This document shows positions 46,810-64,000 of a stretch of 64,000 nt of DNA, one piece after another. Source of the DNA: Auanema rhodensis (lineage: Eukaryota; Animalia; Nematoda); the NCBI GenBank assembly GCA_964057225.1, contig OZ059894.1, forward strand, positions 17,360,001-17,424,000, given 5' to 3'. Every line of letters begins with the position of its first letter. Position 1 is the first letter of the stretch. The translations under genes and the position numbers were made by a program. The notes beneath the pieces were generated by a model. The model had not been told where the DNA came from, ran no database searches, and saw only the letters and a list, made by a program, of their open reading frames with translations.

Positions 46810-49800
46810 ATGTATATAGTTAAGGTTTATATGGCATTGTTTATCTTATTCACGGTTTAGATAACATAAGATTTCCGTCCTTCAGAAGACAATACGCTTG
46901 CGCAATAGTTTGTCATGTAGTCCATGTTATTCCGACAAAATCTAAATGTACTTACATTGTCATCTCCATTTCCTTTATAGTTACTTAAGTAATTGAATAC
47001 AACTAAAAAGGGAACAGTATTCTAGAATATTATATATAAATTAAATAAATCTATTGATTATAATTATATTTCAGGTAGTACCTGTGACTCATGTAGCTAC
47101 ATTTGAAATACAAAATTTAACTATCAAATGGTCAAATCATGAATGTTCGGACGCTGTCGAAGGTTATTTCATCTATATTTTCACCAATAATACCATTATT
47201 TCAGATTGCGTATATAAACTTCGAATATGCGGGGGAGTAAGCTTTCGAAAAGCTCCAATGAATAGAAATTGCCCATATCTATATCAGACATATGATATAT
47301 CGTCCAATACATATCCGAATTCTTTAACTATTCCTATACGCATACGTTGGCCGGAAGTAAGCTTTATTCATTGTTTTAGAAATAGAAAATCATAAATTTT
47401 ATCGTAAATGGGTCATCATCTGCCACCAGTAATAGCAGTCTCATTTCGGTGAAAGGGACTGAATGCCATCATAATTCTCAATACAGTAGTGTACAGGCTC
47501 TATGTTTTGAAAATATTTCAGACAATTTCCAATAATTTTGCAAAAAAATTGGTAATCTATGATTTTAGTTTTATTTTTAGAGAACATTCAGATATGTTCA
47601 TATAAAAAGTGAAAAATGTTCGAAAATTAGTTAGCGTTCTATTAACATCTGTTTTGGCGCCGTTTTATTCATTTCAATATTTCTTTTAGATTTCAGTGGT
47701 CTCAGTGTATTTTCAAATATAGTTTTCATAATGAAAAGAAGAAAGAGACCTACTGATTTTATGCCTTTTTGATTTTTGCTTACATTTCTTCTTTGCATTA
47801 TTGAAGTTATGCGGTACTTTTCTTTCAAGTATTCTCCTTTAATCCTACTTTTCTCACTTTTAAATATTTGTAGGCAAATACTATATCAAAGTATGGGAGA
47901 TAGAGAACGAATGAAAGTTATTAACTGTTCTACGTTGTAAACAACGTAATGGACATTCAATCAAATTAAGAGATTGTAATCAGCATGATATATTCAGCTG
48001 TTGACCTACAACTTGAGCAGCTTGAACTAACGCCAGTTCATGTACTCAACACTTCTTAATGGCTCGCAGCTGTGATTGAACTCTGCGGGTTACGCAATTT
48101 TGTCAGAAAATTGTCAAAATTCGACTCGTAAATTTGGGATTAATAAGCCAATGATCAAGTCATCGAATGAGGATAGCGATTACTATATGGCGGTTGAGAT
48201 TTGATGGAAAAGAGATGAGGAGACAGGGATCGAAAATAGTTGATGAAGAGGAAATGGATGACAGTTGATGTCTTTGAAATTCAACCAGAAATGACCTTCC
48301 ATGATACATTTACTGAGAATGTCTGCCGGAATCTGACGAAATCATAATGATGAATTGAGCATGAAAGAAAGAAATATCGTCATCTGAGATAATGAAGATG
48401 TTCTATTCATAGCTATAGGAGATTTGTCTATATTTAGCAAATAAATTTCATTCATATTCCATTATGTCAGAATATATTTTGAAAATGAGATGAAGATTAA
48501 TTATGAAAATAAAAATATATTATTCAAATCATTCTTAATATTGAACAAATAAAAATTAATTTTTTTTTTCAAATTATGAAGATATATTATAATGATTTTC
48601 TGTTTCAGACACCTTGGCATCTTACAATTAGTATTTTGAGGAATTATCATGATATTCTATTTGAATCATCTGCTTTTTATGAAAAACATACAGCATCTAA
48701 TGATTGGGAAATTGTGAATTTGGTATTTTTATAATTTTTAATTCTTAATTGCTTTATATGAATTATAGAAAACATCGACTACTGATATCAAATTCAATTT
48801 CAAAATCGAATGTCAACCTTTCATGTTTGGACCTTCTTGTGCAACATACTGTAATGACAAACAGCCAGAGTAAGCTAATACAGTATTCAAACAAATATAT
48901 TTTAATACTCTTTTACAGTCCTTTAGGTGGCCACTTCAAATGCTCCTCTTTAGGGGATCGTTTATGTGCTCCGAATTGGACAGGCTTAGGCTGTAATGAA
49001 CCTATCTGTTATCAGAAATGTGTAGAAGGACAAGGCAATTGTACACTACCAAACGTTTGCAGGTAATTCTTTTAAAAATGAAATAATTGTCGTTTTGAAC
49101 GACATATAGTTAAAGTAATAGTTTATACATGTATTGTACTTTAACTTTATTCAATCATGATAAACATGATCTAAAATAAAAAGAGAATAGAAAACGACAA
49201 TTTTGTGAATTCACTCTATTCCGAGGAAAAAAATATTGACTTGAACAAAAAAAAAGAAAAAATGACCAGACTTTGTACTTTCTAAGTAAAATTTGGATTG
49301 TCTACTATTTCTAAAATGAATCAATTTAGATAATAAATTCTATTGTTTCCTTGTTTATCGAAAAATATTTTTGAAACTTCCTCTACGCTTTTCGTCTTTG
49401 ATATTGAGAGATCGAATTGTTTTGTATCATCATGTGCTACCTACAACATTATCCGGAAAGAGAATTTTTCAAAATTCATAGAAAAACATTCGAAATCTCT
49501 GTTTAAATCTGTTTTTGGAGTGTAAAACTTTAATTTGAAAAACGAAAGATCATACAGATGATAGTGGCTTCAAGTAGGAAACTGAATTTTTTTTCGAATT
49601 TTCTATTCAAAGATGATTTTAGCAGATTAACTAATGATTCATATGAATAGTTCATCATAACCACATCCGTTTGCACTTTTCAATAAAACAAAAAATCTCA
49701 ATTACATGATGTATAGAATATTTGAAAAAGAAAGTATTTGGAAATCTAATTGATGAAGAAATTTAGAAAAAGATTGAAGTCAACTGTTTTCCTAATTTTT

Positions 49801-50867
49801 TTTAATTTTTATAGTTGTAACCGTGGTTGGAAAGGAGCCTCATGTGATCAATGTGTGCCGCTCCGAGGCTGTCAACATGGGTACTGTAACCGACCCGGAG
49901 AATGCATATGCCATGAACATTGGACAGGACCAGCTTGCAACATGTAAGTCATTATATCTTATCTTTTCATTTTTACTTGTTTGGAAATGAAGGAAGCAAC
50001 TGAACAAATCTTTCGAGAACTATAAGGAAAAACTTAGTTTTATCAATTTTCAGCGAAGTTGATTACTGTAGAAGACATGCTGGAATATGTTTAAATGGTG
50101 GAACATGCTCATCCGCAGGAATGGAAAATGGATATTACTGCAACTGTACAACTGAATTTGAAGGACAAAACTGCGAAATTCCGGTAAAACAATTGATTTT
50201 TCTGTTTGTTTTTTTAACAAAAAAGTCTTGTTTTTCAGAGAGATCCATGCAGCAGTATCGATTGTGGTAAAGGATTATGTGTTAATGAAGATGGTCATCC
50301 ACGATGTTATTGTCCACCTGGAACATTCTGTACAGATTTAGATAAAACAGGAGATTTAGAAAGCAATTACATGCAAACATCAGGTGTGGACATATATTTA
50401 AGTGAAACATAAAGATGAATTTAATTCTTTTTTAGCTGCTGAATTCATTTGGTCACATACATTTTCATCTATTTTATCCTTACTTTGTCTTGTATTTGGT
50501 TTAATAAGTTTATTGGCTGGCTTTTATTATCTTCACAGAAAGGTGAATTTTTTTAGTTTCCCTTTTTAATTTTTACATTTTTGCAGAAATTGGCGCAGTC
50601 TGATAGCAGCATAGAAAGTATTGGCAGCATAGAATCAAGCTTTTCAAAGGAAAAGAGAACAGCATTGTGCGGTATGCCCTTCTTCTTCTTTTTTTCTTTC
50701 ATCAGCATCTTTTCTCTTCTACAAAGCATTAGTTTTTTCTATTTCTTTCAGATGATTTGATGGAACCGCCCCCAAGCTACAGTCTACTGGATGTATCAGA
50801 GAAATCTCCATCACCACGAATATCAAGAGAATCCAGAAAATTTATATTTTCATCAACAACAGTGTAA
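46810..50867 (+). CDS. apx-1: DSL-family Notch ligand (APX-1/Delta-like): C2-like domain, DSL, 4 EGF repeats, TM, PPxY, PDZ-binding end
   Basis: DSL domain [18 protein letters not shown]...[22 protein letters not shown], four EGF repeats, [25 protein letters not shown], tail ...EPPPSY...SSTTV*. Start codon (46810 or 46831) and orthology are tentative. Confidence 0.88.
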
Positions 50868-53800
50868 ATTTTTATTAGAAGAATTCAATGCTGACATAAT
50901 TTTAGTTTTATTCCAAATTTTTTAAAAAATAATTTTTAAACTACCTCAAGCATATCTTGTCTAGCTTAGAGAATATAATTTGTAAAAATCAACGAAAGAG
51001 CTTATTTACTATATAATATTCCTCTTTTTCTTATTAAAAAGCATAATTTCTTATTGTTATTGTATTGTTTTTTTTTAATTTAAGTCAAATATTTCAACGA
51101 TTTAATGGGTTAATGTACCTTAATCAACGGGTTTTTTTCAATACGTTAATTTAAACGATATCTACTCAGTGTTTTTGAAATATTTACTGTTAATTATTTA
51201 TTGTATAATTTGATTTTTGTACAAAAAATACAATATTGTTTCATAAAACTAAAAATAAATTTGAAATTTGGCTTGTTTCTTACAATTCATAGAATAACAT
51301 TTTTCATGGAATTCATTATATTGACAATAGAAGACGTCAAGAGAAAAAAGACATTAAAGGAAAAAACAATAAATTATCGAATTAAATGTCCTGAGGGAAA
51401 ATAAAGTTGTAAGATGAAAAATTCTTTGAATTTCACCGAAATGAGGTAATACAGTTGATATTTGTGTTCCGACAAAGAAACATTGCGGTAACATAGACAT
51501 AATTGCAATTTTGAAGTACAAATGTCTCAATTTCAATTATATGATAAAGCATTATGAATAAACAGAAAAAAAGCTGATATAATCATTAATACATTAATTA
51601 ATATACATATAATTATATTATCAGACTTACATTTTATGGCTAATATGTACAATAAAAATTAGAGAGATTTTGGGAAGGAGGTGGGTTATTAGATGCTCAC
51701 CTGTTGCCAGATTTTTCTAATTTTGATGTGTTTATGATGAGATTGATTAATAAATAAGACCTATTACATGTCATAATAGCGATAATATGATGATTAATGA
51801 CAAATTCATCAAAACAGCTGGCATTTACAAGAAAATATTCACAAAAAAATGAAACAAATTGTTGATCTGAAGACATGCTCTATAAGGTTTTCTTCAGAAC
51901 ATTATATATTCTCAAACATGATTGCGTCATACTATTGTTCTTTAACATGTTAATATTGAATAATTAGTTCAAAGAATTGTGAAAATATTTTTATATAATA
52001 TATAATTAGTAAAAATTTATATTCAATTATATTTAACGGCTATATGATCCTAATAAAATACTATTCAATTCACATAAACGATAGGTCAACCCAACATACA
52101 TGCTGAGTGAAAAAATATCTGAAAAGAATAAATCTGACGATTCATATATCATATAATTTAAAGAAGAGAAAAGTTCTACTTAATTCTCTCGGTATTTCAG
52201 TATATCAATATCAATTGTCTAATATAATATAACAATTATAAATTTGTTTATTACATGAGGAAGTGTCTCATTATGCGATTTAGTGCTAACAAGGCTTCTG
52301 AAAAGTGAAAAGCTTCCTAGCGGTTTCTTTGATGAAGCAATAGGAGATGTCAGGCCAATCGGAAGCCTTTGAAGAAGCTGAGTAGAAAAATACGATGTGC
52401 AATCGCACATGGATACAGTTGCTTCTGACCTTAGATAGAGATTGTATTGCAGTTGTTTCTATGAACAAGCTAAGTGAAGATGAGAGAGAAAGAGATGAAG
52501 AAAATATCATCAGATACTATTGTACATATGTATATTTCTTCTTTTTATTTACTTAGATGTTTATTCAATAATAGTTGCAACTGTCAGCTGGTAAGTCGGC
52601 TTCTTTATAATAATGACGAACTAAAAAAGGAAATATTAGACATTACATATGGAAAAAAGGCGAATTGTGATAACTACAATGATGATCCTCACGAGTAATT
52701 CAATTTTTTTGATAAACAAACAAATTACATAGAAAAACATCTAAAATCTAAGTTTTCAGACAATTCTTCTCATATATTTCAGTAACTATCTTACAATATT
52801 CCACCCCATTAAGCATATACATCCACCTCTTTCGGAAATTGGAGTCACCTTCAGAAAAAAATTTTACCGCAAAAGGCTAACAATTGGCTTGGACACCACA
52901 CATGAAAAAATATTAGAAAAACATTTAAACCGAAAGGATTTCTTGTCATACTACTCAACGCCTTATTGTCCTTGTCGATTTCTTTAGTTATTTTTTGTTG
53001 AAATTAGAAAGAAAATCATGTTCATCATTTCTCAAACTTTTAAAGCTTAACATTAACATATAACAAAGTATGCTGATACGAAGTTAGTTAACAAGTTGGC
53101 GGGTGGATGAAGGAATTTACAATTTTCCAGCTGACCTATAATCTTTGAGTAATGTGCGTGATGAGACTCCAACAATACTTATGATCTCATAAAACTCTTC
53201 TAAAGTAACTCTCATGATCGTCTTTGTCTTCTCTCATCCAAATCAACATAATCTCTTATTGTTCTTTTATATTCTTCTGATTCTACAACATATCTGACCG
53301 ACAGCTTCTATACCTATGTGCTCTAGTAGCGGCAATTGCATAATCAAGTGCCTCTCCAAATGGCGCAACTTGTAGACTGTGTCGGATATGTTCAAAGCAT
53401 GGAAGCCAATTAACCTGAAGCAATATACGGTATATGACCCTCAAAGCTTGCTCTAGGTGGTAAATGATCGGACCAAAAGAATCAATTACGGAAACTAAAA
53501 TGAAAGGAATAGATTAAGATTTAGAGGATTACGGTCAGTATGTGATAGCTGTCAGAAAGCTATTTAGGTAATGCTTAGTCATCACATAGTATCATTGACA
53601 TGAAAAGAAATTCTGAGAAGTGGTTGATTGACATAAAAAACTGAAAATTTCAAAGAAAGTTTAAGAAATATAGGACATTTCATTTTGATAATTTTGAAAT
53701 AGTTTTATCTAAAAGACGGACATTCCTCATTATTCATTCAAAACATTTGATTGGCATATTTTAGATTACTCATCAACAGTTATTCGTGTTCGACATATAA

Positions 53801-54629
53801 TATCTGAGAATATGACGAAATAATGAAATATCCTAAGTGAAGAAATTTTAAAAATATATACTTTTATAGTAAAAAAAACTTCAAAATAACCAAACTATTC
53901 TATATAATAACTAACTCAAAAATGAAATATCATCTAATGAGGCTTATACAACAAGTATAGAGTGAAAAGATTTGTAGGTCAAATTGTTATTTAATACAAC
54001 TCATAAATCCATTATCTTCCTCATATCGTCATATCAAATTTCATTAAGACAGTTGTTTTTTGGATAAAATTAACTATGATTTATTAAAATATTAATAGTT
54101 AGTATATTATAATAAAGATTGTAACAGTTATTCAAATATAGTTTTTCTTAAAATAAAGTTTGTTCATGGTCAACATTTACCTCATTTCTTTCATTTTTAT
54201 GGTAAATACAAGGTGTTCTCCTCTATCTTAATCCTAAAAAGATCTACTCATGAGATTAGACGACGTCTAGCTGTGCTTATTCAAGCAATAGACTCTGACA
54301 GAGTACGGTAATGAGTCAACAACCGGATGCAGGTGGCTGGCAATTAGTAGAGAAAACACTGAACCATTGAATCTTCCATTATTTCATAACAAGCTCATTC
54401 TAAATTAGCTTCTCCATTTCCTTTACCACCAATTCCTTAAATTAACTAAAATCTCGCTCATACGTGATGGAACACGTGGAATAGTTCTTCTCAAGAATCT
54501 CAAAATCCTACTTGAGATCATCTAAGTATGAATGGTAATTAATCCAACAAATTATTGAGTTTAATAGAATCTTAAAGATTAGTTTAAGACGTAATGAAGA
54601 AGCATAAGAGGATGTAGATAGGAGATGAT

Positions 54630-54690
54630 GAGAGCGAGAGAGGGAGAGATAGAGATAGAGAGAGATAGAGAGAGAAAGAGAGAGAGAGAA
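54630..54690. repeat. Imperfect (GA)n/GAGATA microsatellite
   Basis: GAGAGCGAGAGAGGGAGAGATAGAGATAGAGAGAGATAGAG..., about 650 nt upstream of the BH3-only gene. Confidence 0.85.
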
Positions 54691-55163
54691 GGAGTACAGT
54701 AGTTGAATATTTTCACTTTTTTCTTTTATTTTTCATATTCTTATATATTCTTATTCAATTTATTTTCAATAATAATGATTATAGCATTTTAGTTAAATTG
54801 ATTCAAAAGGTGAAATTATTTTCTTTTTTCCTTACCATATGGCAATTTTATAGTTTGTTTCGAGCTTCTTACTAAACTACTTCCAATAAATATGTATTAT
54901 ATATAATGATAGAAAGAATAGTAAAAGAGATACAAAAGTATTTGGAATTGTATGAGAATTTGAATATATATGGAAACGTTAACGACTGTGACATCTCAAT
55001 GGACGAAATCTTTTCAAGTATTTGTCAGTCTCATTATGAAGACAATTCAATGTATCTCCTTATAAGCTCTTAACAGATACTTTCTCATCAAATTCTTTTG
55101 TTTTTCCACAATAATGCTCTGACTGTGCCATGACATCCGGCTTATTGTTTCGTAGGCATCCGA

Positions 55164-55335
55164 TTCCCACGCTGGCACGATAGGGGGCGGAGCTAACATC
55201 TACAAATGGGCGGAGCAGCTGATGGCTTGCGATGCTGTTTCATGGTTATTTCCACCTGCTAGCAGTCAACCAGCCGGTTTATTTTCTCCCAGCTTCGAAA
55301 CCAATTAAGGAATCTATTCAAGCCTAGACTTGTAT
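55164..55335 (+). promoter_or_regulatory. Proximal promoter of the BH3-only gene: CSL site, two GC boxes, E-boxes, p53-like element
   Basis: TTCCCACG (CGTGGGAA) at 55164, GGGCGGAGC at 55185 and 55208, CAGCTG at 55216, CACCTG at 55253, ATTCAAGCCT-AGACTTGTAT at 55316-55335. Confidence 0.55.
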
Positions 55336-55344
55336 TCTGAACAA

Positions 55345-57181
55345 ATGATTGTAAGTTCTTTTTTTTGGTTTTTTTCTGTTTTTTCAACATTTTCCCTTCG
55401 ATCTTCTTGCATTTTCACGTAAACTGTTCATTTATATATTACATTTATTTATTGAAAATGACAAAATATGAATTAATTTTTCATAAAAAACGCAGAAAAA
55501 ACATTGAAAATGAGTTTTTTCAATAAAATTTCCTTTTTTCCTTTTTTTAAATTTTGCTTATTCTTATGATACTTAATATTTTCAGATGTTCACAATACCT
55601 TCTACATACCGAGACAGTGGCTATAATAGTCCTTGCTCTCCATCCACTTCAACAAGCTTCGACACACCCGTACGAGCTCAAAGGTTCGCCGCCGCAATCC
55701 GACAAAAATTGGATTTTTCCTCATCATGGTCAGTCAGTACTGTCAGTGTGGCCACCCAAACAGGTGATTTATTCATTTTTATTGTTTTTAAAGGGTTTTT
55801 AATGGTTTTTCCTTTCATGTATCAGATCATAGACCTCCCTCTAATGAAATATTATAAAGATTTCATTAGATCTCATAACCATATAGTATAAATATAAACA
55901 TCTAAAATATAAGATTTTCCTATTTCATTCTGCTATTCTTTTTATTTTACCGACTACTGTTATACACGGTTAATACTATGAAGAAAACAAAAGGCTGTAT
56001 ATAGCGTGCCAATATGCTTTTCATAGTCATTCGGTGAGATCTAAAAGAATTTTCGAAGCTAATCTCATAGTTATACAGTAGCTGCTATTTTGTTTATTCA
56101 ACTCCTTTCTGCTCATCTTTCCGAAACTGTCTTCAGCTCGTTTTTTTAACGTAAAATCCACTTGTTCACCTATTCATGTGAAATGATGCGGAAATCAGCT
56201 GTAATATGAGTGAACCTGTCTTTAATAAGATGTTAAAAGCTGCCAATTAAGCTGACCTCTGGGTGTATTGTGCAGACGATTAGGAAGACCATTTAACCTT
56301 ATTTTCTATTAATAAGACAGAGCAAATGACATCTATGCTCAAATCTCTATTTATTTATTTTTATCTTTGTTATTTCAGTATATTTGGATCCCATTTGCAA
56401 GCGGATAGCCAACCGTTTATCTCAATTAAGCGACGAATTCGATCAGGAATATTTCCAACCAATAGAAAAGGTAAATTTTAAAATTTCTATTCAAAATCTT
56501 CGCTAACTAATCCTATTAAATGAAAATTAGCATATTATGATTTGCATAATTAAGTAAAAGTTATGAAACCTATTCAAGCATAAAGTTTATATAGTTAATA
56601 ATTTAGAACAATACGAGCTAGGATTAACTTAATACATAATAGCCTTATTAGGAGAATCATTACTAAACGATGTATCAATAATTTCAAAACATGTTGTATT
56701 CTATCAACTCTATCCCTTTCTCTTATAGCTTACCGATTCATTCAAACCATCTGCCTATTTCGTAGTTGTGTTCAAAACTCATTGACGCTGTCTCAAGCCT
56801 AGAACATGAACAACCACTGACCTTGGGCTTTGTTACTCGGCCATATTTTCTCCTTCTTGTCTACTGTTGACTAAATAACAAGTACCGGAAACACATGAAA
56901 GAATCTTTAGTATAGTTAGGCATAGTTAACCCTTTGATCGTATTGTTTTACTGAGAAAATACTTGAGATTTACTTGTAATATAGCGTATCCTCTCATACT
57001 TACGCCTATTGCTTTCAAGTTTCTTCATACAATATTACATAGATTACCGTACTTGATATATGACCTAAATGAAAATTATATTTACTATAAATATTTTATT
57101 AATATTTTATATTTTCAGGAATGCTCCAATGATTCTATCATATCAATTTTGGAAAATGTGATCAAGTTGTTATTGTTCTAA
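55345..57181 (+). CDS. BH3-only pro-apoptotic protein (EGL-1/CED-13 class) with BIM-like motifs, 112 aa
   Basis: Exons 55345-55350, 55586-55763, 56379-56470 and 57119-57181 splice in phase. BH3 IANRLSQLSDEFD, upstream DSGYNS and VATQT, tail IISILENVIKLLLF*. Confidence 0.8.
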
Positions 57182-60100
57182 CTTCTAAATCTACTATAGC
57201 TATCATACAAATCACATCTGTGCCAAAGGCTACATCTATCAACCAGCTCTTCTCTAAGTCATTCAAAGCAATTTGTGCAACATGATTTTTTGGGCCATTT
57301 TTGCCTAGTTATGTACATACAAAATAAATATATTCAATTTTACAATTTGTTTTCTTAAGTATTTTAAGATAAATATGGATAAGCTTGAGCTTAACCTTAC
57401 ATACATGATACAATTACTTAATATTTTCTTATTTGGATATTTATATATAGATTAATCTGTCAGTAACTATACTTGATACTCATTCTCAGCAGTCTGAATA
57501 AATAATCTGTGTAAGCTTTAGTTGAGAAGTCTGAAAAATGAGGAATATCCTTGTCACCTCGACTCCCACCTGTGTCAATATGCCACTACCAGCCTATCCC
57601 AGAATCCCATCATTTTACCAATATGTATATTGAAAATAATAGTTTATGAACAAATAAAGAAGTAATTAACTAATTTTTGATGATAAAACTGATTAATAAA
57701 TCTTTTAAATATATACAGACAGACACAATTATGATATGTAATTCAAGATTTCATCACAATAATTCTTGAGGTAATTGAATCTTCAGCTGTTATGGCCGTA
57801 TCTTCCTCGTCCTATACTCTCTACCTCATTTCAGACTGTTGTTCTGACACCTCTGTTTTGAGAGAGAAGATTAGCACCTGTGTGCAACACATGTCCTTAT
57901 AATATGAACATATGTATATATGTTCGTACTGAAATCATCTAGAGTATCAAATTTACCGTAATCCAATAATACATCATTGCCTATTTCTGTTTCTATTAAT
58001 CCATTTACATAAGTAACTATAGAATGTTCATAGCCATAGGCAACAACGAAAAAAAAGATTATGGATTACTGCATAATCTACTATAGATACATAGATGAAT
58101 GTATCTCAACTGACATCTGGCAAATATGTCTATCATGAACTATTCTTTCAATCTCTCATTCAAAAACTCACACTCTCATGTCTCTCTTTTCCTTTTATCT
58201 AGTAAAGTGGTCAAGATTTGACATCAATCACCGTTTTTTGCTCTTCCTATGTCATGCTCATTGTACATTCGTCACTCTCAATCGCCTAATTCTTATTACG
58301 ATTACACACAAAAACGCCTCAGGGGTTTTGCACCAGATGCCGTTCTCGAACAATCACATATGGAAATAGTCCTGTGCTTCAGCTCAACATATATCCACAT
58401 AAGATCAACCAGCTGGTTATATAGCTATTTTCTAACAATAGTTTAGATTATAGAACACAATACTTTGTCATTTATTCTTCTTGAAAATCATTCATCGGCA
58501 TCCTCAATGCCTTCTATATTCATGTGCATCTCTTCCGTTGATTTATTTTATTACAGATGTGAAGAAACAAATTTTCCTCAAAAATTTCACTTTCTATCCT
58601 ATTTCTCGTAACCGCTTCTCATGTAGTACCTTACTGATATTTATGTTTCTTTAATTGTTTTCTCTAACAATTAGCAACATTTCATTTTGTAATTAATAGA
58701 TCTTTCTTAAACCGGCATCTTAAATAGGCTACGATTTCGTGTGAAATAGTAAGAACTAATGGTATTTAAAGAAATTTCTTAAACAACTTCAATGTTCAAG
58801 ACGGAAATCTCATATAAGGTTTACTTGTTAGTAAAGCAAATGAAAGTGCTACGGTATCACATTCATCAAATTTGACATAATGAATTTCATGTGTCGGGAC
58901 TTACCGAAACAGCTCCTTTGACGATCATAAACTAAAAATTACGTTGCTTTCCATATTAAATCATCAGCTGTCTTGTAGGTTAGGATCATAAGTGTGCCGC
59001 CGCAGCGTAACATACCCTAGAGACATCATTACCGTAATCGTCAAGACAAGGCGCACACGACAGACGTTAATTCGAAAATAACGGCGCATGAGCTTTGTTC
59101 TTGCTCATTATAGTCATAAAGAATAAGAAAAACAGAAGAAATATGACCAAAAACAGTTAATTGGTTGTCTGATTACATAATTCAGACGAGTACCGTCAAA
59201 CAACAACAATCAGTGAGTGACAGCAACAAAAACTTACCGAGCTTTAGTTGTATAGTGGAGAACATTTTCTTATAATAAGCGATGTAGTAGAGATCAGATT
59301 ATACCATAATATTCAAGAAACTATTACTACTCTACTTTTCTTTTTTAAATATTATAGAAAATCCCTATATAGTCAGTTCTTCCCTTATGGTTGAAAAACG
59401 GACATTCGGTTTTTATGCCACACGTTACATTTCCGTTGAACCATATTTCATCGTTTTGCTCTTAATGGCTATAGGTTTGATCTATGACGGTACGTCGACA
59501 GCCGATTTCCATATTCAGCAACATGCCGCTCAGTTTCTTTGCCGATCTATTGTGTATAGGATTCGAATCTTGCATAATAAAGTGACAGATCGCATTACGC
59601 AAATTTTGTTTGTGTTTACAACAGCTTAGACCAGTTTTTATCCGAAAAATTATTTTTAAGGGCTTTCAATAAGTTTTATACAATTACATAATACCGGAAA
59701 GAAGAAAATGTGTGAATAGAGTTTATGGTTCAAATATTTTAAAAAGGAATTTTTTTTTGTATTTTTTTTTGAAATTGAAACATTAGACACATTACATAAT
59801 CTAATATAAACTAATTAAATTGAATTTAGTCATCTAGAAACCATGAATATAATTGAGTAATAGGCAAACAATACATGCCTCGACGTCTACGTGACACACC
59901 TGTCTCCATTATCTGTAGACTAAATTCATTAGAATCATTACTATGAAGCTGAACCATTTTATAGCTCAATATAAGGATGCTTCCGGAAGGTCGTTCGGAA
60001 ACGGACTTCCTAACTCTCGTTAATTTCGCGCATTCAACTGCAGAATTACGAGATATTATCCATACAGAGACAACCATAAGCAGTCTTGTTCAATTATGAA

Positions 60101-61328
60101 CAACAACAGCGTTAGAACAATAATGGACGTCCTCACACCTGCATCTCGACAATGGAGTATAGAGAATGAAGAGAGTGCTAACAAGATAGAATGAGAAGTA
60201 CTATATAGAGGATTAGATGGCCAATAGCTCTCATTATGATTTGCAAATTTCATATGGTGGCTCTTCAAAATATAATATTAATGATATCTAGAGTAATTAA
60301 CTATGAACCAGCTTCATTTGTTTTTTTTTAAATCTTAATATTCGTTTAAACAAAAATATTCAGAAGTCAAATAAAAAAGAATTTGAAATATTCTGTGACT
60401 TCGAAAACATTCGAAACCGGAAATTGACTCTTGGGATCTGAAAATGATACAGGGATGTCCTTTTAGTAATATTAACGAGGAAAAAACCTTGAATAAACCT
60501 TAGAATACGAATAATGATGTATTATGCTGAGCATATAGGAAGATATCATGTTCCTATTTACTTATTTGTTTAAACAAATGATTGTTATTTGCCAATAAAC
60601 GTGATTGTTAGTAGAAGGGCATCAAAATTGACACCTAATCATGCAATGTTATAACTCAAAAATACATAGTTCTGTTGTGCGCGAGAATGAGCATAATCTT
60701 AATACCACATCATAAAGTACTTCTTAAAATATCAATAATGAGGTCAGGAAGGTTAACGAAACTTTAATTTTGCTTATATTCTAATTAGCATAATTCACAA
60801 CGAAAATTCTCCTTCAGTTTTTCAAACCATTTTCCATCTAAGCTTGAAGCAGAGCGGTTGATTTTTAGACAGTTCGACTGTGGAACTTATTTTCGGTAAT
60901 TTTCGAAAAAAATTTTCCTTTCGCTCACGGTGTGGGATGTAAGTTAATATAGAAATATCTTTAGCTTGAGATGTATCAATATATCATTGATATTTGATTA
61001 TCAAAATAAGGATTTGGCGCGAAAATCTTCGCAGGCATGATTTTGATGTAATCTTTTCATTTTTATCCTGGAGCAACCTAGAGATAGGTGACTTTTATTA
61101 TTTTTTAAATTAATTTTTTAAATGTTTTTATTTAATAGTAATACTTTGGAATTATTCAATCAATATACGATTAAGACCTTTCAAGACCGCATTAACTGAA
61201 AAAGAGCTATTATTTTCTTTTTATATCTTATGTAGTATAATAATGTGTTAAATGTATTCTCACTGTATGTATACGTTTAGGTTTTTCATTATATTTATGT
61301 TTCAGAGGTTTCTATTTTACAAGTACTC

Positions 61329-61939
61329 ATGACCAACGCTGAGTTTAACAGTACTGTGTTAGCTCCTGTATTTTTCCCTTCTGCTCTCTCTCCTTCCAAG
61401 ATGGTAGAAGGTATGCGTTTTTTATAATTTCTATATTTAACTTTATGTTCAGAAAGCGTTAACAAATACGAATCAACATTTGCTGATAAAAGGAGTTGTT
61501 CGAAATCCTCAGGTATATTGCTGTTACATTAATTATTACAAAATTATTCATTTTAGATTTTCATAATAATTGTAAATGTTATAAGTGTGTAGATATAGAT
61601 ATGCGTATGTTTTTTTTTAATTTTTAGACAATTGGTTTTTATATTTCATTGCAGACCATTTGGCTCTCTCTCCGGAGGTATATAGAAAGCGGAACAAAGA
61701 AATTGCTCAACTTTTATACAGGAAAACAGAAGAATTTGATAAGACATACTTCAATTCAGGAGTTAAATTGTCTTCAGTAGGTTCTTTCAATTGTTTCCAA
61801 ATTAATTACGTTTTTCAGCTCTGGGGATGTTTTGTGGACCTTTCAGCAAAAATTGTTTTAGATTATTTTCTATAATATTAGCATTTACAATTTTTAGATT
61901 CTGTACAATCATTCTTGTTGTTTTGCATTCCTTGTCTAA
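61329..61939 (+). CDS. Small protein with a degenerate BH3-like motif (probable paralog of the BH3-only gene)
   Basis: Exons from the ATG at 61329 splice in phase to HHLALSPEVYRKRNKEIAQLLYRKTEEFDKTYF. Last exons are ambiguous (stop at 61875 or 61939), hydrophobic either way. Confidence 0.6.
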
Positions 61940-62511
61940 TCTATTCGTCAATATTCGTATCTTTGTAAGATTCTCTATTTCAGATGTTCTATAGTTTTAA
62001 TTCTAATACCGTGTTTGTATTTGCATCTTACAAATGTTTTAAGTTTCTTCCGGAAATGCTTTAGGAATATATGGTGCCTTGTTTCACTTTTTTAGTGATT
62101 TCATATCTTCATACGTCTACTGTCTTTCCTTCATCCAGCATGTAATAATTCGTCTTGCTAGGTTGAGCTGAAGTTTATACATTACCCTTCATTGAAATCC
62201 TTTGGTGAATGTTGGTTAGCTTTCTCATATGTACATAACATTGATATTATTTTAAAGATAATTAGTTCTTTATTCTGTATTATCCGTAGGATTGTGTTTT
62301 TGTTACCATTCGTTTAGTATTGTGAATTCTATGCGAAATTGAATAAAGTCTGCTTCGGCAAACTATGTTTTGTATGGTGCTCCTTCACGCTCGGTGTGTT
62401 TTATATTGGTCGCAAGCTGGATTTGAAATATCTTTATAAGTAGTAAATTCGATAGTTATATTAAGTATCAATGAGTTCTTTTATGAAATTATTATTTTTT
62501 CTGTTCAGCTC

Positions 62512-64000
62512 ATGTTCTTTCGATATAAATTAAACCATAGCATATGTAGGAGATTTTGTGTTGATAATGTAAGCAGGTTAGAAAATGATTCTTGGTTTTA
62601 TGTTCAATCATTTTGGTATTTAGATCATTCGATGTCGATTTAGTTAGTTCAAACTTCGCAAAAAGAACAGAATGGGCTTCAGCCAACTTTGGCAATTCAG
62701 GTAACGGCATATTTCATGATAAAGTCATGTAATATTGTTTCCAGGAGCTCCATTTCGTATGGTTCTTCCTCCGCCAAATGTTACCGGAAAGTTACATATT
62801 GGACATGCATTAACTGTAGTAGTTGAGGATTCAATTTGTAGGCATCATCGAGCGAAAGGAGGCGTTGTAATATTATATTTATTATGTGTTGCTTTATAAA
62901 TCTTTAGGCTATATGGACACCTGGATTTGACCACGCTGGTATAGCTACTCAATCAGTTGTTGAAAGAGAGTTATGGAAGGCAGAAAAAAAATTACGACAT
63001 GATTTGAGTCGGGATGAATTTATATCGGAATGCAAAGCTTTTTCGACCAAGTATTTTATATTGAAACATATATATTTCATTATTCTTTTAAGAAATGCTG
63101 AAGTGATATCGTCTCAATTGAAACGCATGGGTGCTACATTAGATTGGGAAAATTCGTACTACACTTTAGATGATGTAAGCCTTTATATTTATAACATTGA
63201 ATTTATAATCACCGATTTGATAGAAATTCTCTTCTGCTGTAACGAGAGCCTTTGTCAGCCTTCATAAAGATAATAAAATATTCCGTGATAAAAGAATTGT
63301 TCAATGGTGTCCCCAGCTTCGAAGCTCTCTCTCTGATCAAGTAAGATAAGTTTTAAACTCAATTAGTGGGGAACAGAGTTAAGGAAGTTGAACGACTCGA
63401 TGTGGGTTCTGGAGAAGTTCTAACGATTAAAAAATCTGAAGGAGGTAGTAGATCAGTTAAGGTTGGGGTGATGCATAAAGTGAAATATATGGTGAAGGAT
63501 TCTCGTGACTGGTTAGCCAATTTGAAAATTCTTTTTATTTCAAATGTTTAGCTTAGAAGTGGGGACAACACGTCCTGAAACCTTATTTGCTGATGTTGCT
63601 CTAGCTGTGCATCCTTCCGATTCCAGATATTCAAAGTTTTATCTCGTAGTAATGCAATTACGTTTTGAAATTTTTTTAAGGTTTATTGGGAAGTTGGTGG
63701 AGCATCCTCTTATCGGTGGTCGCTTCATGCCTGTAATTGCTGATGAAAGCGTTAAAATGGATAAAGGAACCGGTAAAAGTTTAATAGCAATGCTTTCATG
63801 ATTTTTCAAATTAAGGAGTTGTAAAAATTACTCCTCATCACGATGGTCTAGACTTTGCAATTGCTTCAAGACATTGGGACGAAATTTCTTCTGTTGATCT
63901 TTCTAGCAAAAATAGGTTAGTTTTTACTTTATCACTTAGGCTGTAAAGTTTTTAAAAGCTTTAATATTCACGTTAATTCTAATTTTACATTATTCATCTG
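62512..64000 (+). CDS. vars-1: Mitochondrial valyl-tRNA synthetase, 5' part (runs off the window)
   Basis: Presequence-like [30 protein letters not shown] (HIGH), [56 protein letters not shown]. Confidence 0.93.

What the first reader, a model, noticed from the sequence alone, without database searches (positions are those of the whole stretch)
55345..57181. BIM/BMF-like BH3-only protein hidden in four small exons
Seen: the spliced product is MIMFTIPSTYRDSGYNSPCSPSTSTSFDTPVRAQRFAAAIRQKLDFSSSWSVSTVSVATQTVYLDPICKRIANRLSQLSDEFDQEYFQPIEKECSNDSIISILENVIKLLLF; the ORF track misses the BH3 exon. Established: LxxxsDxF is the BH3 core (EGL-1 IGSKLAAMCDDFD, BIM IAQELRRIGDEFN), DSGxxS is the beta-TrCP phosphodegron, and xTQT binds dynein light chain LC8 in BIM and BMF. 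Inference: the order degron, TQT, BH3, hydrophobic tail is the BIM layout. This suggests post-translational control of apoptosis (LIN-23/beta-TrCP turnover, DLC-1 binding, membrane anchoring) beyond the mainly transcriptional control described for C. elegans EGL-1. TQT-bearing BH3-only genes may already be reported in other non-Caenorhabditis nematodes.
Basis: partly seen in the sequence, partly recalled or inferred. Interest (0 to 1): 0.85.

Follow-up and report, generated by a model that had tools for sequence, protein, structure and literature searches.

The report
EGL-1-type death gene with LC8 motif
A small four-exon roundworm gene, confirmed by spliced RNA, encodes the local version of the cell-death trigger EGL-1. 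Unlike the C. elegans protein as I recall it, it keeps two short conserved motifs that in the mammalian killers BIM and BMF control stability and sequestration.

Summary

It belongs to a clade V nematode BH3-only family. I recovered 16 relatives from Auanema, Diploscapter, Pristionchus, Caenorhabditis auriculariae and strongylid parasites. Intron positions are shared in the six loci I mapped, and four rhabditid loci share flanking genes. The family profile's best solved-structure match is C. elegans EGL-1 (E 0.0025). Pfam EGL-1 is the top hit for four members but always below threshold.

Only seven columns are invariant family-wide: D-S-G and P of DSG[YF]x[SN]P, and L, D, F of the BH3. ATQT is invariant in all free-living members (four genera) and absent from all ten strongylid sequences. 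The window's VSVATQTV outscores validated LC8 sites, including BIM and BMF, on a matrix built from phage-selected binders.

So the degron-like, LC8-like and BH3 elements are real, selected motifs; what they bind is untested. The C-terminus is an amphipathic helix, not a membrane anchor. No sequence homology to BIM or BMF beyond the motifs was detectable.

EGL-1-like genes in clade V were reported in 2026. I found no report of the TQT or DSG motifs. Verdict: new variant of a known kind.

The parts
55345..55350 (+). Coding micro-exon 1 (Met-Ile). The 5' UTR extends upstream to at least about 55248.
   Evidence: ATGATT|gtaagt. The junction 55350|55586 appears in contigs of 3 runs, and the X2 contig continues 52 nt beyond 55300. 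MIMF- also starts the JU1783 and C. auriculariae proteins.
55586..55763 (+). Exon 2: disordered N-terminal half carrying the DSG, SFDTP, IRQKL and TQT blocks. It ends in a phase-1 intron right after TQT.
   Evidence: An intron lies a few residues after the TQT position in every mapped locus; phase 1 is readable in JU1783, P. pacificus, D. pachys and C. nassatus.
55613..55633 (+). D12-S-G-Y-N-S-P18: a DSGxxS-type motif, candidate beta-TrCP/LIN-23 phosphodegron.
   Evidence: D, S, G and P are invariant in all 16 family sequences counted, as conserved as the BH3 core. Residues 12-30 are identical to JU1783 although synonymous sites are saturated. The consensus DpSGXXpS is taken from PMC13097077.
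55742..55763 (+). V55-S-V-A-T-Q-T61 (V62 is split across the intron; it is completed at 56379-56380): candidate LC8/DLC-1 binding strand.
   Evidence: A58, T59, Q60 and T61 are invariant in 6 free-living sequences from 4 genera, while the rest of the linker is about 20% identical. PSSM score 22.6 bits; the flank score is reached by 0.05% of random flanks. It differs from phage-selected clone VSRATQTV at one position.
56379..56470 (+). Exon 3: the BH3 exon.
56405..56440 (+). BH3 core I71-A-N-R-L-S-Q-L-S-D-E-F82.
   Evidence: L75, D80 and F82 are invariant in the family. The family profile aligns this region to EGL-1 of PDB 1TY4 (E 0.0025), followed by BMF, PUMA, BAD and BIM BH3 peptides. In the orthologue model AF2 predicts helix 66-87, and residues 71-80 average pLDDT 89.
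57119..57181 (+). Exon 4: C-terminal amphipathic helix (SIISILENVIKLLLF, 57134-57178) and TAA stop. The 3' UTR runs to at least 57300.
   Evidence: AF2 predicts helix 95-109 in the orthologue. Kyte-Doolittle 19-residue maximum is 1.18, and the hydrophobic moment is 0.44.
56729..56885 (+). Alternative exon inside intron 3, seen in one low-depth contig. It would replace the C-terminus by LTDSFKPSAYFVVVFKTH and a stop.
   Evidence: X1 record 2 carries the end of exon 3 joined at 56727/56729. The acceptor and first 60 nt are 80% conserved in JU1783, but with a 1-nt indel.

Best explanation
This is the EGL-1-family BH3-only death activator of an Auanema-like rhabditid nematode. The closest available relative is Auanema sp. 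JU1783, at 73% protein identity over exon 2.

The protein is largely disordered. Its single amphipathic BH3 helix (IANRLSQLSDEF) most likely inserts into the groove of the CED-9/BCL-2 orthologue and frees CED-4 to activate the CED-3 caspase, as EGL-1 does in C. elegans. That step is inferred.

Two short linear motifs upstream of the BH3 are under strong purifying selection. An N-terminal DSG[YF]x[SN]P is most likely a phosphodegron read by SCF-LIN-23/beta-TrCP, which would keep the killer short-lived. A [VA]ATQT[VDE] strand is most likely bound by the dynein light chain DLC-1/LC8, which would dimerise or sequester the protein. Both roles are inferred.

The TQT site appears ancestral for clade V. 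It is present in Pristionchus, Auanema, Diploscapter and Caenorhabditis auriculariae, and it was lost in strongylid parasites. By my recollection only, it is also absent from C. elegans EGL-1.
For: Transcript and splice junctions. Product.

Family: a profile search of 1.84e9 proteins returned nine family members, including the query row from JU1783, plus three repeat-type hits that I discarded. A word-indexed search added six more. All share the same block order.

Orthology: the three-coding-exon structure and intron positions are shared in the five orthologue loci whose full structure I mapped (JU1783, P. pacificus, D. pachys, A. ceylanicum, C. nassatus) and in the window; the C-terminal exons of C. 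auriculariae also match. A ValRS-like gene lies downstream in the window, JU1783 and C. auriculariae. A Reeler-domain gene lies upstream in C. auriculariae and Diploscapter.

Link to EGL-1: the profile's best PDB match is 1TY4 chain C, C. elegans EGL-1, at E 0.0025. Pfam PF11430 is the top hit for P0001, P0005, P0006 (19.9 bits) and P0011.

Selection: dN 0.22 against saturated synonymous sites (pS 0.735) versus JU1783.

Motifs: invariant columns are D12, S13, G14, P18, L75, D80 and F82 in 16 sequences, and A58-T61 in the free-living ones.

LC8 fit: VSVATQTV uses a phage-selected residue at every position. It scores above 53BP1, Nek9, Swallow, dynein IC, BimL and Bmf. DLC-1 is described as 95% homologous to DYNLL1 (PMC3789177).

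Structure: the TQT region is disordered and the BH3 is a confident helix in AF2.

Context: EGL-1 protein is actively removed from mother cells before division by an unknown mechanism (PMC13545084). C. elegans EGL-1 itself keeps DSGFFDDS 12 residues before its BH3, verified against the 1TY4 chain.
Against: PF11430 never reaches its gathering score of 21.2 bits, and the window's own BH3 exon gives no Pfam hit.

Elegans-group Caenorhabditis EGL-1 sequences were not retrieved by either search, so orthology to C. elegans egl-1 rests on a weak profile match and on C. auriculariae.

The LC8 site lacks the K/R at position -3 of the classical [K/R]xTQT class. Diploscapter's flanks are unremarkable on the phage matrix (19% of random flanks score as high).

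P. mayeri has DSGFSN, without the sixth-position Ser.

Loss of TQT in ten strongylid sequences shows that it is dispensable for the core function.

The RNA evidence comes from one study and from contigs, not raw reads.
Confidence: 0.6

Rival explanations
1. The gene is an EGL-1-like BH3-only killer, but the conserved motifs do other jobs. The T-Q in ATQT could be a PIKK (ATM/ATR-type S/T-Q) phosphosite that couples the protein to DNA-damage signalling. DSG[YF]xSP and the following Ser/Thr-Pro run could be a proline-directed or CK1/GSK3 phospho-cluster that tunes CED-9 binding, not an LC8 strand and a beta-TrCP degron.
For: The motifs are short, and conservation shows constraint, not the partner. 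S-P dipeptides follow the DSG block. Position -3 is not basic as in the classical LC8 class (PMC3078936). Strongylids keep DSG but drop TQT, so the two motifs are separable.
Against: The whole octamer, not only T-Q, fits the LC8 preference. V-5, S-4, V-3 and A-2 are all phage-selected, and only 0.05% of random flanks score as high. A PIKK site would not require the second Thr or the preceding Ala, yet A, T, Q and T are all invariant. D-S-G with an aromatic at +3 and Ser at +5 is the canonical beta-TrCP consensus (PMC13097077).
Confidence: 0.2
2. The protein carries a BH3-like helix but is not a dedicated apoptosis trigger. It could, for example, be a regulator of another CED-9-independent process, and the resemblance to EGL-1 would be motif-level only.
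For: All database links to EGL-1 are weak (E 0.0025 in PDB; Pfam below threshold). BH3-like motifs occur in non-apoptotic proteins. A degenerate tandem paralogue exists.
Against: The size, the disorder, a single BH3 with all four hydrophobic positions, the small residue and the Asp, and the C-terminal helix all match EGL-1-type proteins. The top 15 PDB matches are EGL-1, eleven BH3-only peptides and three designed proteins. Members of the same family, from Pristionchus spp. and Cylicocyclus nassatus, were taken as EGL-1-like in PMC13760059.
Confidence: 0.1
3. The TQT and DSG matches have no function of their own. They would be inherited sequence in a slowly evolving part of the protein.
For: TQT arises in 2.6% of shuffles of this protein. 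The motifs were picked out after the fact.
Against: The linker around ATQT is only about 20% identical between genera, while A, T, Q and T are invariant. Synonymous sites are saturated even between the two Auanema-like species. D, S, G and P are four of only seven invariant columns in 16 sequences.
Confidence: 0.05

Closest known systems
C. elegans EGL-1 (Pfam PF11430; PDB 1TY4 chain C) and the 'EGL-1-like' homologues of clade V nematodes described in PMC13760059 and PMC12983753
   Same: Both are small disordered proteins of about 100-115 aa with one BH3 (EGL-1 has IGSKLAAMCDDFD; here it is IANRLSQLSDEFD) and a short hydrophobic or amphipathic C-terminus. EGL-1 is the best PDB match of the family profile. 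EGL-1 also has a DSG motif, DSGFFDDS, upstream of its BH3. The family includes proteins from Pristionchus and Cylicocyclus, genera whose EGL-1-like homologues entered the 2026 expanded model.
   Different: Here the DSG block sits at the N-terminus, about 55 residues before the BH3, whereas in EGL-1 it is 12 residues before it. An ATQT LC8-type motif is present; by my recollection it is absent from C. elegans EGL-1, but I could check only the 45 aligned residues of the 57-residue PDB chain. Pfam's EGL-1 model does not reach threshold. The papers I searched mention neither dynein/LC8 nor this motif.
Mammalian BIM (BCL2L11; BimEL/BimL)
   Same: The order of elements along a disordered chain is the same: phosphodegron for beta-TrCP (Ser93/94/98), then the LC8/DYNLL1 site (CDKSTQTP at residue 110), then the BH3, then a C-terminal hydrophobic segment (PMC4695108; PMC3078936 Table S1). 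Diploscapter CDAATQTD and C. auriculariae CNAATQTD even share the Cys at -5, and Diploscapter the Asp at -4, with BimL. BimEL is degraded in mitosis, and EGL-1 disappears from mother cells before division (PMC4695108, PMC13545084).
   Different: No Pfam BIM family matched at E<=10. No vertebrate protein was found in the 1.84e9-protein scan. The BIM BH3 peptide scores only E about 1.2 against the family profile. The C-terminus here is too short and too polar for a tail anchor. I could not obtain a tool-derived full-length BIM sequence, so no direct alignment was made.
Mammalian BMF
   Same: BMF has an LC8 site with Ala at -2 (EDKATQTL) upstream of a BH3 (IARKLQCIADQF). After EGL-1, that peptide is the best-scoring BH3 peptide against the family profile (E 0.67). 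Diploscapter has ...LADQFN, as BMF has ...IADQFH.
   Different: The match is not significant on its own. No BMF Pfam hit was found. BMF is not known to me to carry a DSGxxS N-terminal motif (my recollection, not tested).

Membership tests
BH3-only proteins | BH3 motif h1-x3-h2(Leu)-x2-h3-[G/A/S]-Asp-x-h4 | tested here: met
   I71-A-N-R-L75-S-Q-L78-S79-D80-E-F82. L, D and F are invariant in 16 family sequences.
BH3-only proteins | The BH3 lies in an amphipathic helix within an otherwise disordered chain, with no BH1/BH2/BH4 domains or Bcl-2 fold | tested here: met
   In the AF2 model of the 73%-identical orthologue, residues 1-60 have pLDDT about 50 and helix 66-87 is confident, with residues 71-80 averaging pLDDT 89. 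There is no Bcl-2 Pfam domain. The hydrophobic moment of the BH3 region is 0.61.
BH3-only proteins | [quoted passage not shown] | not testable with these tools
   This needs binding and killing assays.
EGL-1 (Pfam PF11430) | Score at or above the Pfam gathering threshold (21.2 bits) | tested here: not met
   The window's BH3 exon gives no hit. P0001 scores 14.9 bits, P0006 19.9, P0011 16.3 and P0005 13.1. PF11430 is always the top family but always below the cut-off. PMC13760059 reports the same limitation of this Caenorhabditis-only model.
EGL-1 (Pfam PF11430) | Specific sequence relationship to C. elegans EGL-1 | tested here: inconclusive
   The family profile's best hit among 177,635 PDB sequences is EGL-1, at E 0.0025 over 37 residues. 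The other BH3 peptides score E 0.7-1.5. That is significant but short.
EGL-1 (Pfam PF11430) | Positional orthology with Caenorhabditis egl-1 | tested here: inconclusive
   The syntenic orthologue in C. auriculariae has a ValRS-like gene downstream, as in the window. Synteny with C. elegans egl-1 itself could not be checked with these tools.
BIM / BMF | Detectable sequence homology to BIM or BMF families outside the BH3 | tested here: not met
   No BIM or BMF Pfam family matched at E<=10. Apart from three repeat-type hits that I discarded, only nematode family proteins were found at E<=1e-3 in 1.84e9 proteins.
BIM / BMF | LC8/DYNLL-binding TQT motif N-terminal to the BH3 | tested here: met
   This is met at sequence level only. 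VSVATQTV lies 9 residues before the BH3 helix, is conserved in 4 genera, and outscores the BimL and Bmf sites on the matrix. Binding is untested.
BIM / BMF | C-terminal transmembrane tail anchor (BIM) | tested here: not met
   The best 19-residue Kyte-Doolittle mean is 1.18, below the conventional threshold of about 1.6 (my knowledge). The tail contains E, N and K. The TM-like tail of the Diploscapter protein is read-through of the conserved intron.
beta-TrCP / LIN-23 substrates | DSGxxS consensus in a disordered region | tested here: met
   The window has DSGYNS. DSG[YF][NS]S is present in 16 of the 17 aligned sequences (P. mayeri has DSGFSN). D, S and G are invariant.
beta-TrCP / LIN-23 substrates | Double phosphorylation, F-box protein binding and phosphorylation-dependent turnover | not testable with these tools
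   This needs biochemistry and genetics.

The most novel reading that the evidence does not exclude
EGL-1 and vertebrate BIM/BMF descend from one bilaterian BH3-only protein that already had the architecture phosphodegron, LC8 site, BH3. On this reading C. elegans is the derived case. It lost the LC8 site and rearranged the N-terminus, which would explain why EGL-1 has looked like an orphan. Its retained DSGFFDDS would then be the handle for the unexplained pre-division degradation of EGL-1.
Probability: 0.3. Interest if true: 0.85.

Novelty: new variant of a known kind. Interest (0 to 1): 0.66.

Why it matters
C. elegans EGL-1 founded the genetics of BH3-only killers. Even so, its relation to mammalian BH3-only proteins is unresolved: PMC8998228 could not decide between divergence and independent origin. 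Its control has been described mainly at the transcriptional and miRNA level.

A 2026 study showed that EGL-1 protein is actively removed before cell division by an unknown mechanism (PMC13545084).

The family defined here supplies two concrete, conserved candidate handles. One is a DSG-type degron, as conserved as the BH3 itself and still visible in C. elegans EGL-1. The other is a near-optimal LC8 site in free-living relatives, including a basal Caenorhabditis and the genetically tractable P. pacificus.

That makes two things directly testable: post-translational control of nematode cell death, and the evolutionary link between EGL-1 and BIM/BMF. The absence of TQT from all ten strongylid sequences is also a clean natural experiment.

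Tried and rejected
- Pfam on the window's exons alone gave nothing useful.
- phmmer of the orthologue against PDB gave only spurious L18 and Nup145N matches. Only the family profile reached EGL-1.
- The word-indexed search with P0001 found only P0001 itself.
- Three hits of the big scan (P0002, P0007, P0010) match in 4-9 separate stretches. P0007, the one I read, is a tandem repeat. I discarded all three.
- I tried to obtain a tool-derived BIM sequence or its degron peptide from papers and supplements and failed. The BIM degron comparison therefore rests on published residue numbers, not on an alignment.
- Synteny around strongylid members was uninformative.
- Rfam found nothing in 51000-62500.
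- The membrane-anchor reading of the C-terminus was rejected on hydropathy.
- The TM-like tail in Diploscapter PAV85436 was rejected as read-through of the conserved intron.
- I did not type full-length EGL-1 or BIM from memory. Only a 45-residue EGL-1 query was typed, and it was verified residue by residue against PDB 1TY4.
Full report
**Observation**

The region is AT-rich (about 31% G+C) and has nematode-type splice signals. On the + strand, exon 1 (55345-55350, ATGATT|gtaagt), exon 2 (55586-55763), exon 3 (56379-56470) and exon 4 (57119-57181) all have TTTCAG-type acceptors and GT donors.

Each contig skips 55351-55585, 55764-56378 and 56471-57118 with GT..AG ends. The run type is only guessed as RNA, but intron-less contigs settle that.

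One low-depth contig joins exon 3 to an alternative exon starting at 56729. That would give a different, short C-terminus.

**What family it is**

A search seeded with exon 2 found one protein, a 110-aa unnamed product of Auanema sp. JU1783 (P0001, 73% identity over exon 2) with the same layout.

A profile of the two was scored against 1.84 billion proteins and gave 12 hits at E<=1e-3. Nine are family members of 101-191 aa matched along most of their length, including P0001 itself. Three are repeat-type hits that I discarded. The sources name the eight new ones as Diploscapter pachys (two copies), Pristionchus mayeri, Caenorhabditis auriculariae, Ancylostoma ceylanicum, Cylicocyclus nassatus (two) and Trichostrongylus colubriformis.

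A second, word-indexed search with the family alignment added A. duodenale, Ostertagia, Haemonchus contortus, H. placei, P. pacificus and a third Cylicocyclus copy.

All share one block order:
- M[IL][MFVL]x at the N-terminus;
- DSG[YF][NS][SN]P;
- SSF[DE]xP;
- [IV]RRKLx[FY];
- in some members, [CR][DNE][AV]ATQT[DEV];
- R[IA]xxRLxx[LM]xDxF[DE]xEF;
- a short C-terminal helix.

**Orthology**

Several lines support orthology:
- The three-coding-exon structure recurs in the five orthologue loci whose full structure I mapped (JU1783, P. pacificus, D. pachys, A. ceylanicum and C. nassatus) and in the window. One intron falls a few residues after the TQT position, in phase 1 where I could read it. 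Another intron follows the BH3 exon. D. pachys has one extra intron, and its annotation reads through the second one. In C. auriculariae only the two C-terminal exons could be mapped.
- A ValRS-like gene lies downstream in the window, JU1783 and C. auriculariae.
- A Reeler-domain gene lies upstream in C. auriculariae and Diploscapter.

Against JU1783, synonymous sites are saturated (pS 0.735) while dN is 0.22, so the protein is under purifying selection.

**Relation to EGL-1**

Pfam's EGL-1 model (PF11430) is built only from Caenorhabditis sequences, according to PMC13760059. It is the top Pfam hit for four family members (E 0.00066 to 0.093) but never reaches its 21.2-bit threshold.

The family profile searched against all PDB sequences gives C. 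elegans EGL-1 (1TY4 chain C) as the best hit, E 0.0025, aligned over the BH3 and 15 residues beyond it. BMF, PUMA, BAD and BIM BH3 peptides follow at E 0.7-1.5.

Two 2026 papers already report divergent 'EGL-1-like' homologues across clade V, including in Pristionchus, Cylicocyclus and Haemonchus (PMC13760059, PMC12983753). Auanema was not in their taxon set. Neither dynein nor LC8 is mentioned in PMC13760059. No paper in the library combines EGL-1, TQT and LC8.

The gene itself is thus a new member of a known, recently delineated family. It is not a separate BIM/BMF-type gene standing beside EGL-1.

**The motifs**

Across 16 sequences only seven alignment columns are invariant: D12, S13, G14 and P18, and the BH3 residues L75, D80 and F82. 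The DSG block is therefore as constrained as the BH3. It fits the beta-TrCP consensus DpSGXXpS (PMC13097077) in 16 of the 17 aligned sequences; P. mayeri has DSGFSN.

C. elegans EGL-1 keeps DSGFFDDS 12 residues before its BH3. I checked this residue by residue against the 1TY4 chain.

A58-T59-Q60-T61 is invariant in six free-living sequences from four genera, including the outgroup Pristionchus and a basal Caenorhabditis. The surrounding linker is about 20% identical. TQT is absent from all ten strongylid sequences; Ostertagia retains ASQTV.

Using the 25 phage-selected DYNLL binders of PMC3078936 (Table S2), I built a position matrix. The window's V-5 S-4 V-3 A-2 T Q T V+2 uses a selected residue at every position and differs from clone VSRATQTV at one position. 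Flank scores on this matrix:

| Octamer | Flank score (bits) |
|---|---|
| Window VSVATQTV | 10.3 |
| 53BP1 | 7.2 |
| Nek9 | 3.2 |
| BimL CDKSTQTP | -5.0 |
| Bmf EDKATQTL | -7.7 |

The window's total score is 22.6 bits, and only 0.05% of random flanks reach its flank score. Every nematode octamer scores at least as high as BimL.

The valine at -5 is the affinity-enhancing residue identified in that paper. The AATQT of Pristionchus, Diploscapter and C. auriculariae matches the 53BP1 site VSAATQTI. Diploscapter's CDAATQTD shares C-5 and D-4 with BimL.

AF2 on the orthologue, run with the family alignment, predicts a disordered N-terminal 60 residues, a confident BH3 helix (66-87) and a C-terminal helix (95-109). 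That arrangement is what an LC8 strand-addition motif and a degron require.

**What is not supported**

- The C-terminus SIISILENVIKLLLF is amphipathic. Its best 19-residue Kyte-Doolittle mean is 1.18, so it is not a tail anchor. This agrees with the CED-9-dependent mitochondrial localisation of EGL-1 reported in PMC13545084.
- The apparent TM tail of a Diploscapter protein is intron read-through.
- No BIM or BMF Pfam family matched, and no non-nematode family member surfaced in the large scan. Common descent with BIM/BMF remains a hypothesis based on motif order.
- The published BimEL order is beta-TrCP phosphodegron at Ser93/94/98, DKSTQT at about 110-116, then the BH3 (PMC4695108; PMC3078936 Table S1). 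I could not retrieve a full-length BIM sequence with the tools.
- That C. elegans EGL-1 lacks TQT is my recollection. Only the 45 aligned residues of the 57-residue PDB chain were checked.

**Mechanism proposed**

Shown:
- an expressed, spliced, selected gene that encodes a disordered protein with a canonical BH3;
- membership of the clade V EGL-1-like family;
- two further motifs under strong constraint, one of them a high-scoring LC8 motif.

Inferred:
- the BH3 binds CED-9 and releases CED-4;
- the phosphorylated DSG block recruits SCF-LIN-23 for turnover;
- DLC-1 binds the TQT strand and dimerises or sequesters the protein.

BimEL is destroyed in mitosis via its degron (PMC4695108), and EGL-1 vanishes from mother cells before division by an unknown route (PMC13545084). 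Together these give the degron reading a concrete test. DLC-1 already has a genetic link to germ-cell apoptosis in C. elegans, though a cell-non-autonomous one (PMC3789177).

**Surroundings**

The gene sits in about 4.5 kb of upstream and about 4 kb of downstream sequence without annotated genes in JU1783. That sequence contains at least 15 blocks of 73-85% identity. The six I examined have no open frame in JU1783 and no codon periodicity. They are candidate regulatory modules, so transcriptional control is likely elaborate here too.

About 4 kb downstream lies a tandem paralogue whose BH3 is broken at three key positions. A relic of it is detectable in JU1783.

**Verdict**

The gene is a new member of the EGL-1-like family. 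The conserved DSG and LC8-type motifs make the family a new variant worth experimental follow-up.

Noticed in passing
window 56729-56885 (+): An alternative exon lies inside intron 3. One low-depth contig (run X1) joins the end of exon 3 to 56729 and would end the protein with LTDSFKPSAYFVVVFKTH. The acceptor and first 60 nt are 80% conserved in Auanema sp. JU1783 but with a 1-nt indel, and ACAAGTACCGGAAA at 56875-56892 is also conserved. It may be a regulated or poison exon, not a conserved peptide.
   Followed up: partly
window 61329-61939 (+): A tandem paralogue has a degenerate BH3 (EIAQLLYRKTEEFDKTYF: h3 is Lys, the small residue is Thr, and Asp is replaced by Glu) and no DSG or TQT. A relic is detectable in JU1783 at L001:15288-15380 (tblastn E 3.5e-4), so the duplication predates the split of the two species.
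   Followed up: partly
window 51681-55280 and 57449-60653: At least 15 blocks of 73-85% identity to the JU1783 locus lie in intergenic DNA, for example 54225-54422, 57449-57578 and 59416-59623. The six I examined have no open frame in JU1783 and no 3-base periodicity, while synonymous sites of the gene are saturated. They are candidate cis-regulatory modules of the death gene.
   Followed up: partly
window 62607-63887 (+) and about 47189-50868 (+): A valyl-tRNA-synthetase-like gene lies downstream. An EGF/DSL-domain (Notch-ligand-like) gene lies upstream. Both are colinear with the JU1783 locus, and the ValRS neighbour is also kept in Caenorhabditis auriculariae.
   Followed up: partly
L002 (C. 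auriculariae CAD6197671) and L004 (D. pachys PAV85436, PAV78861): Public annotations of orthologues look wrong. The C. auriculariae model carries a 78-aa N-terminal extension before the conserved MIMFAM start. The Diploscapter models read through the conserved intron after the BH3 exon, which creates a false TM-like tail.
   Followed up: partly
P0015 (Ostertagia ostertagi), residues about 70-76: At the position where free-living relatives have ATQT, Ostertagia has EASQTV. This is possibly a decaying or variant LC8 site in a lineage that otherwise lost it.
   Followed up: no
Cylicocyclus nassatus contig CATQJL010000001.1: Three family members (P0008, P0011, P0019) lie on one chromosome-scale contig, and two have nearby accession numbers. 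This is consistent with the copy-number expansion reported in PMC13760059.
   Followed up: no
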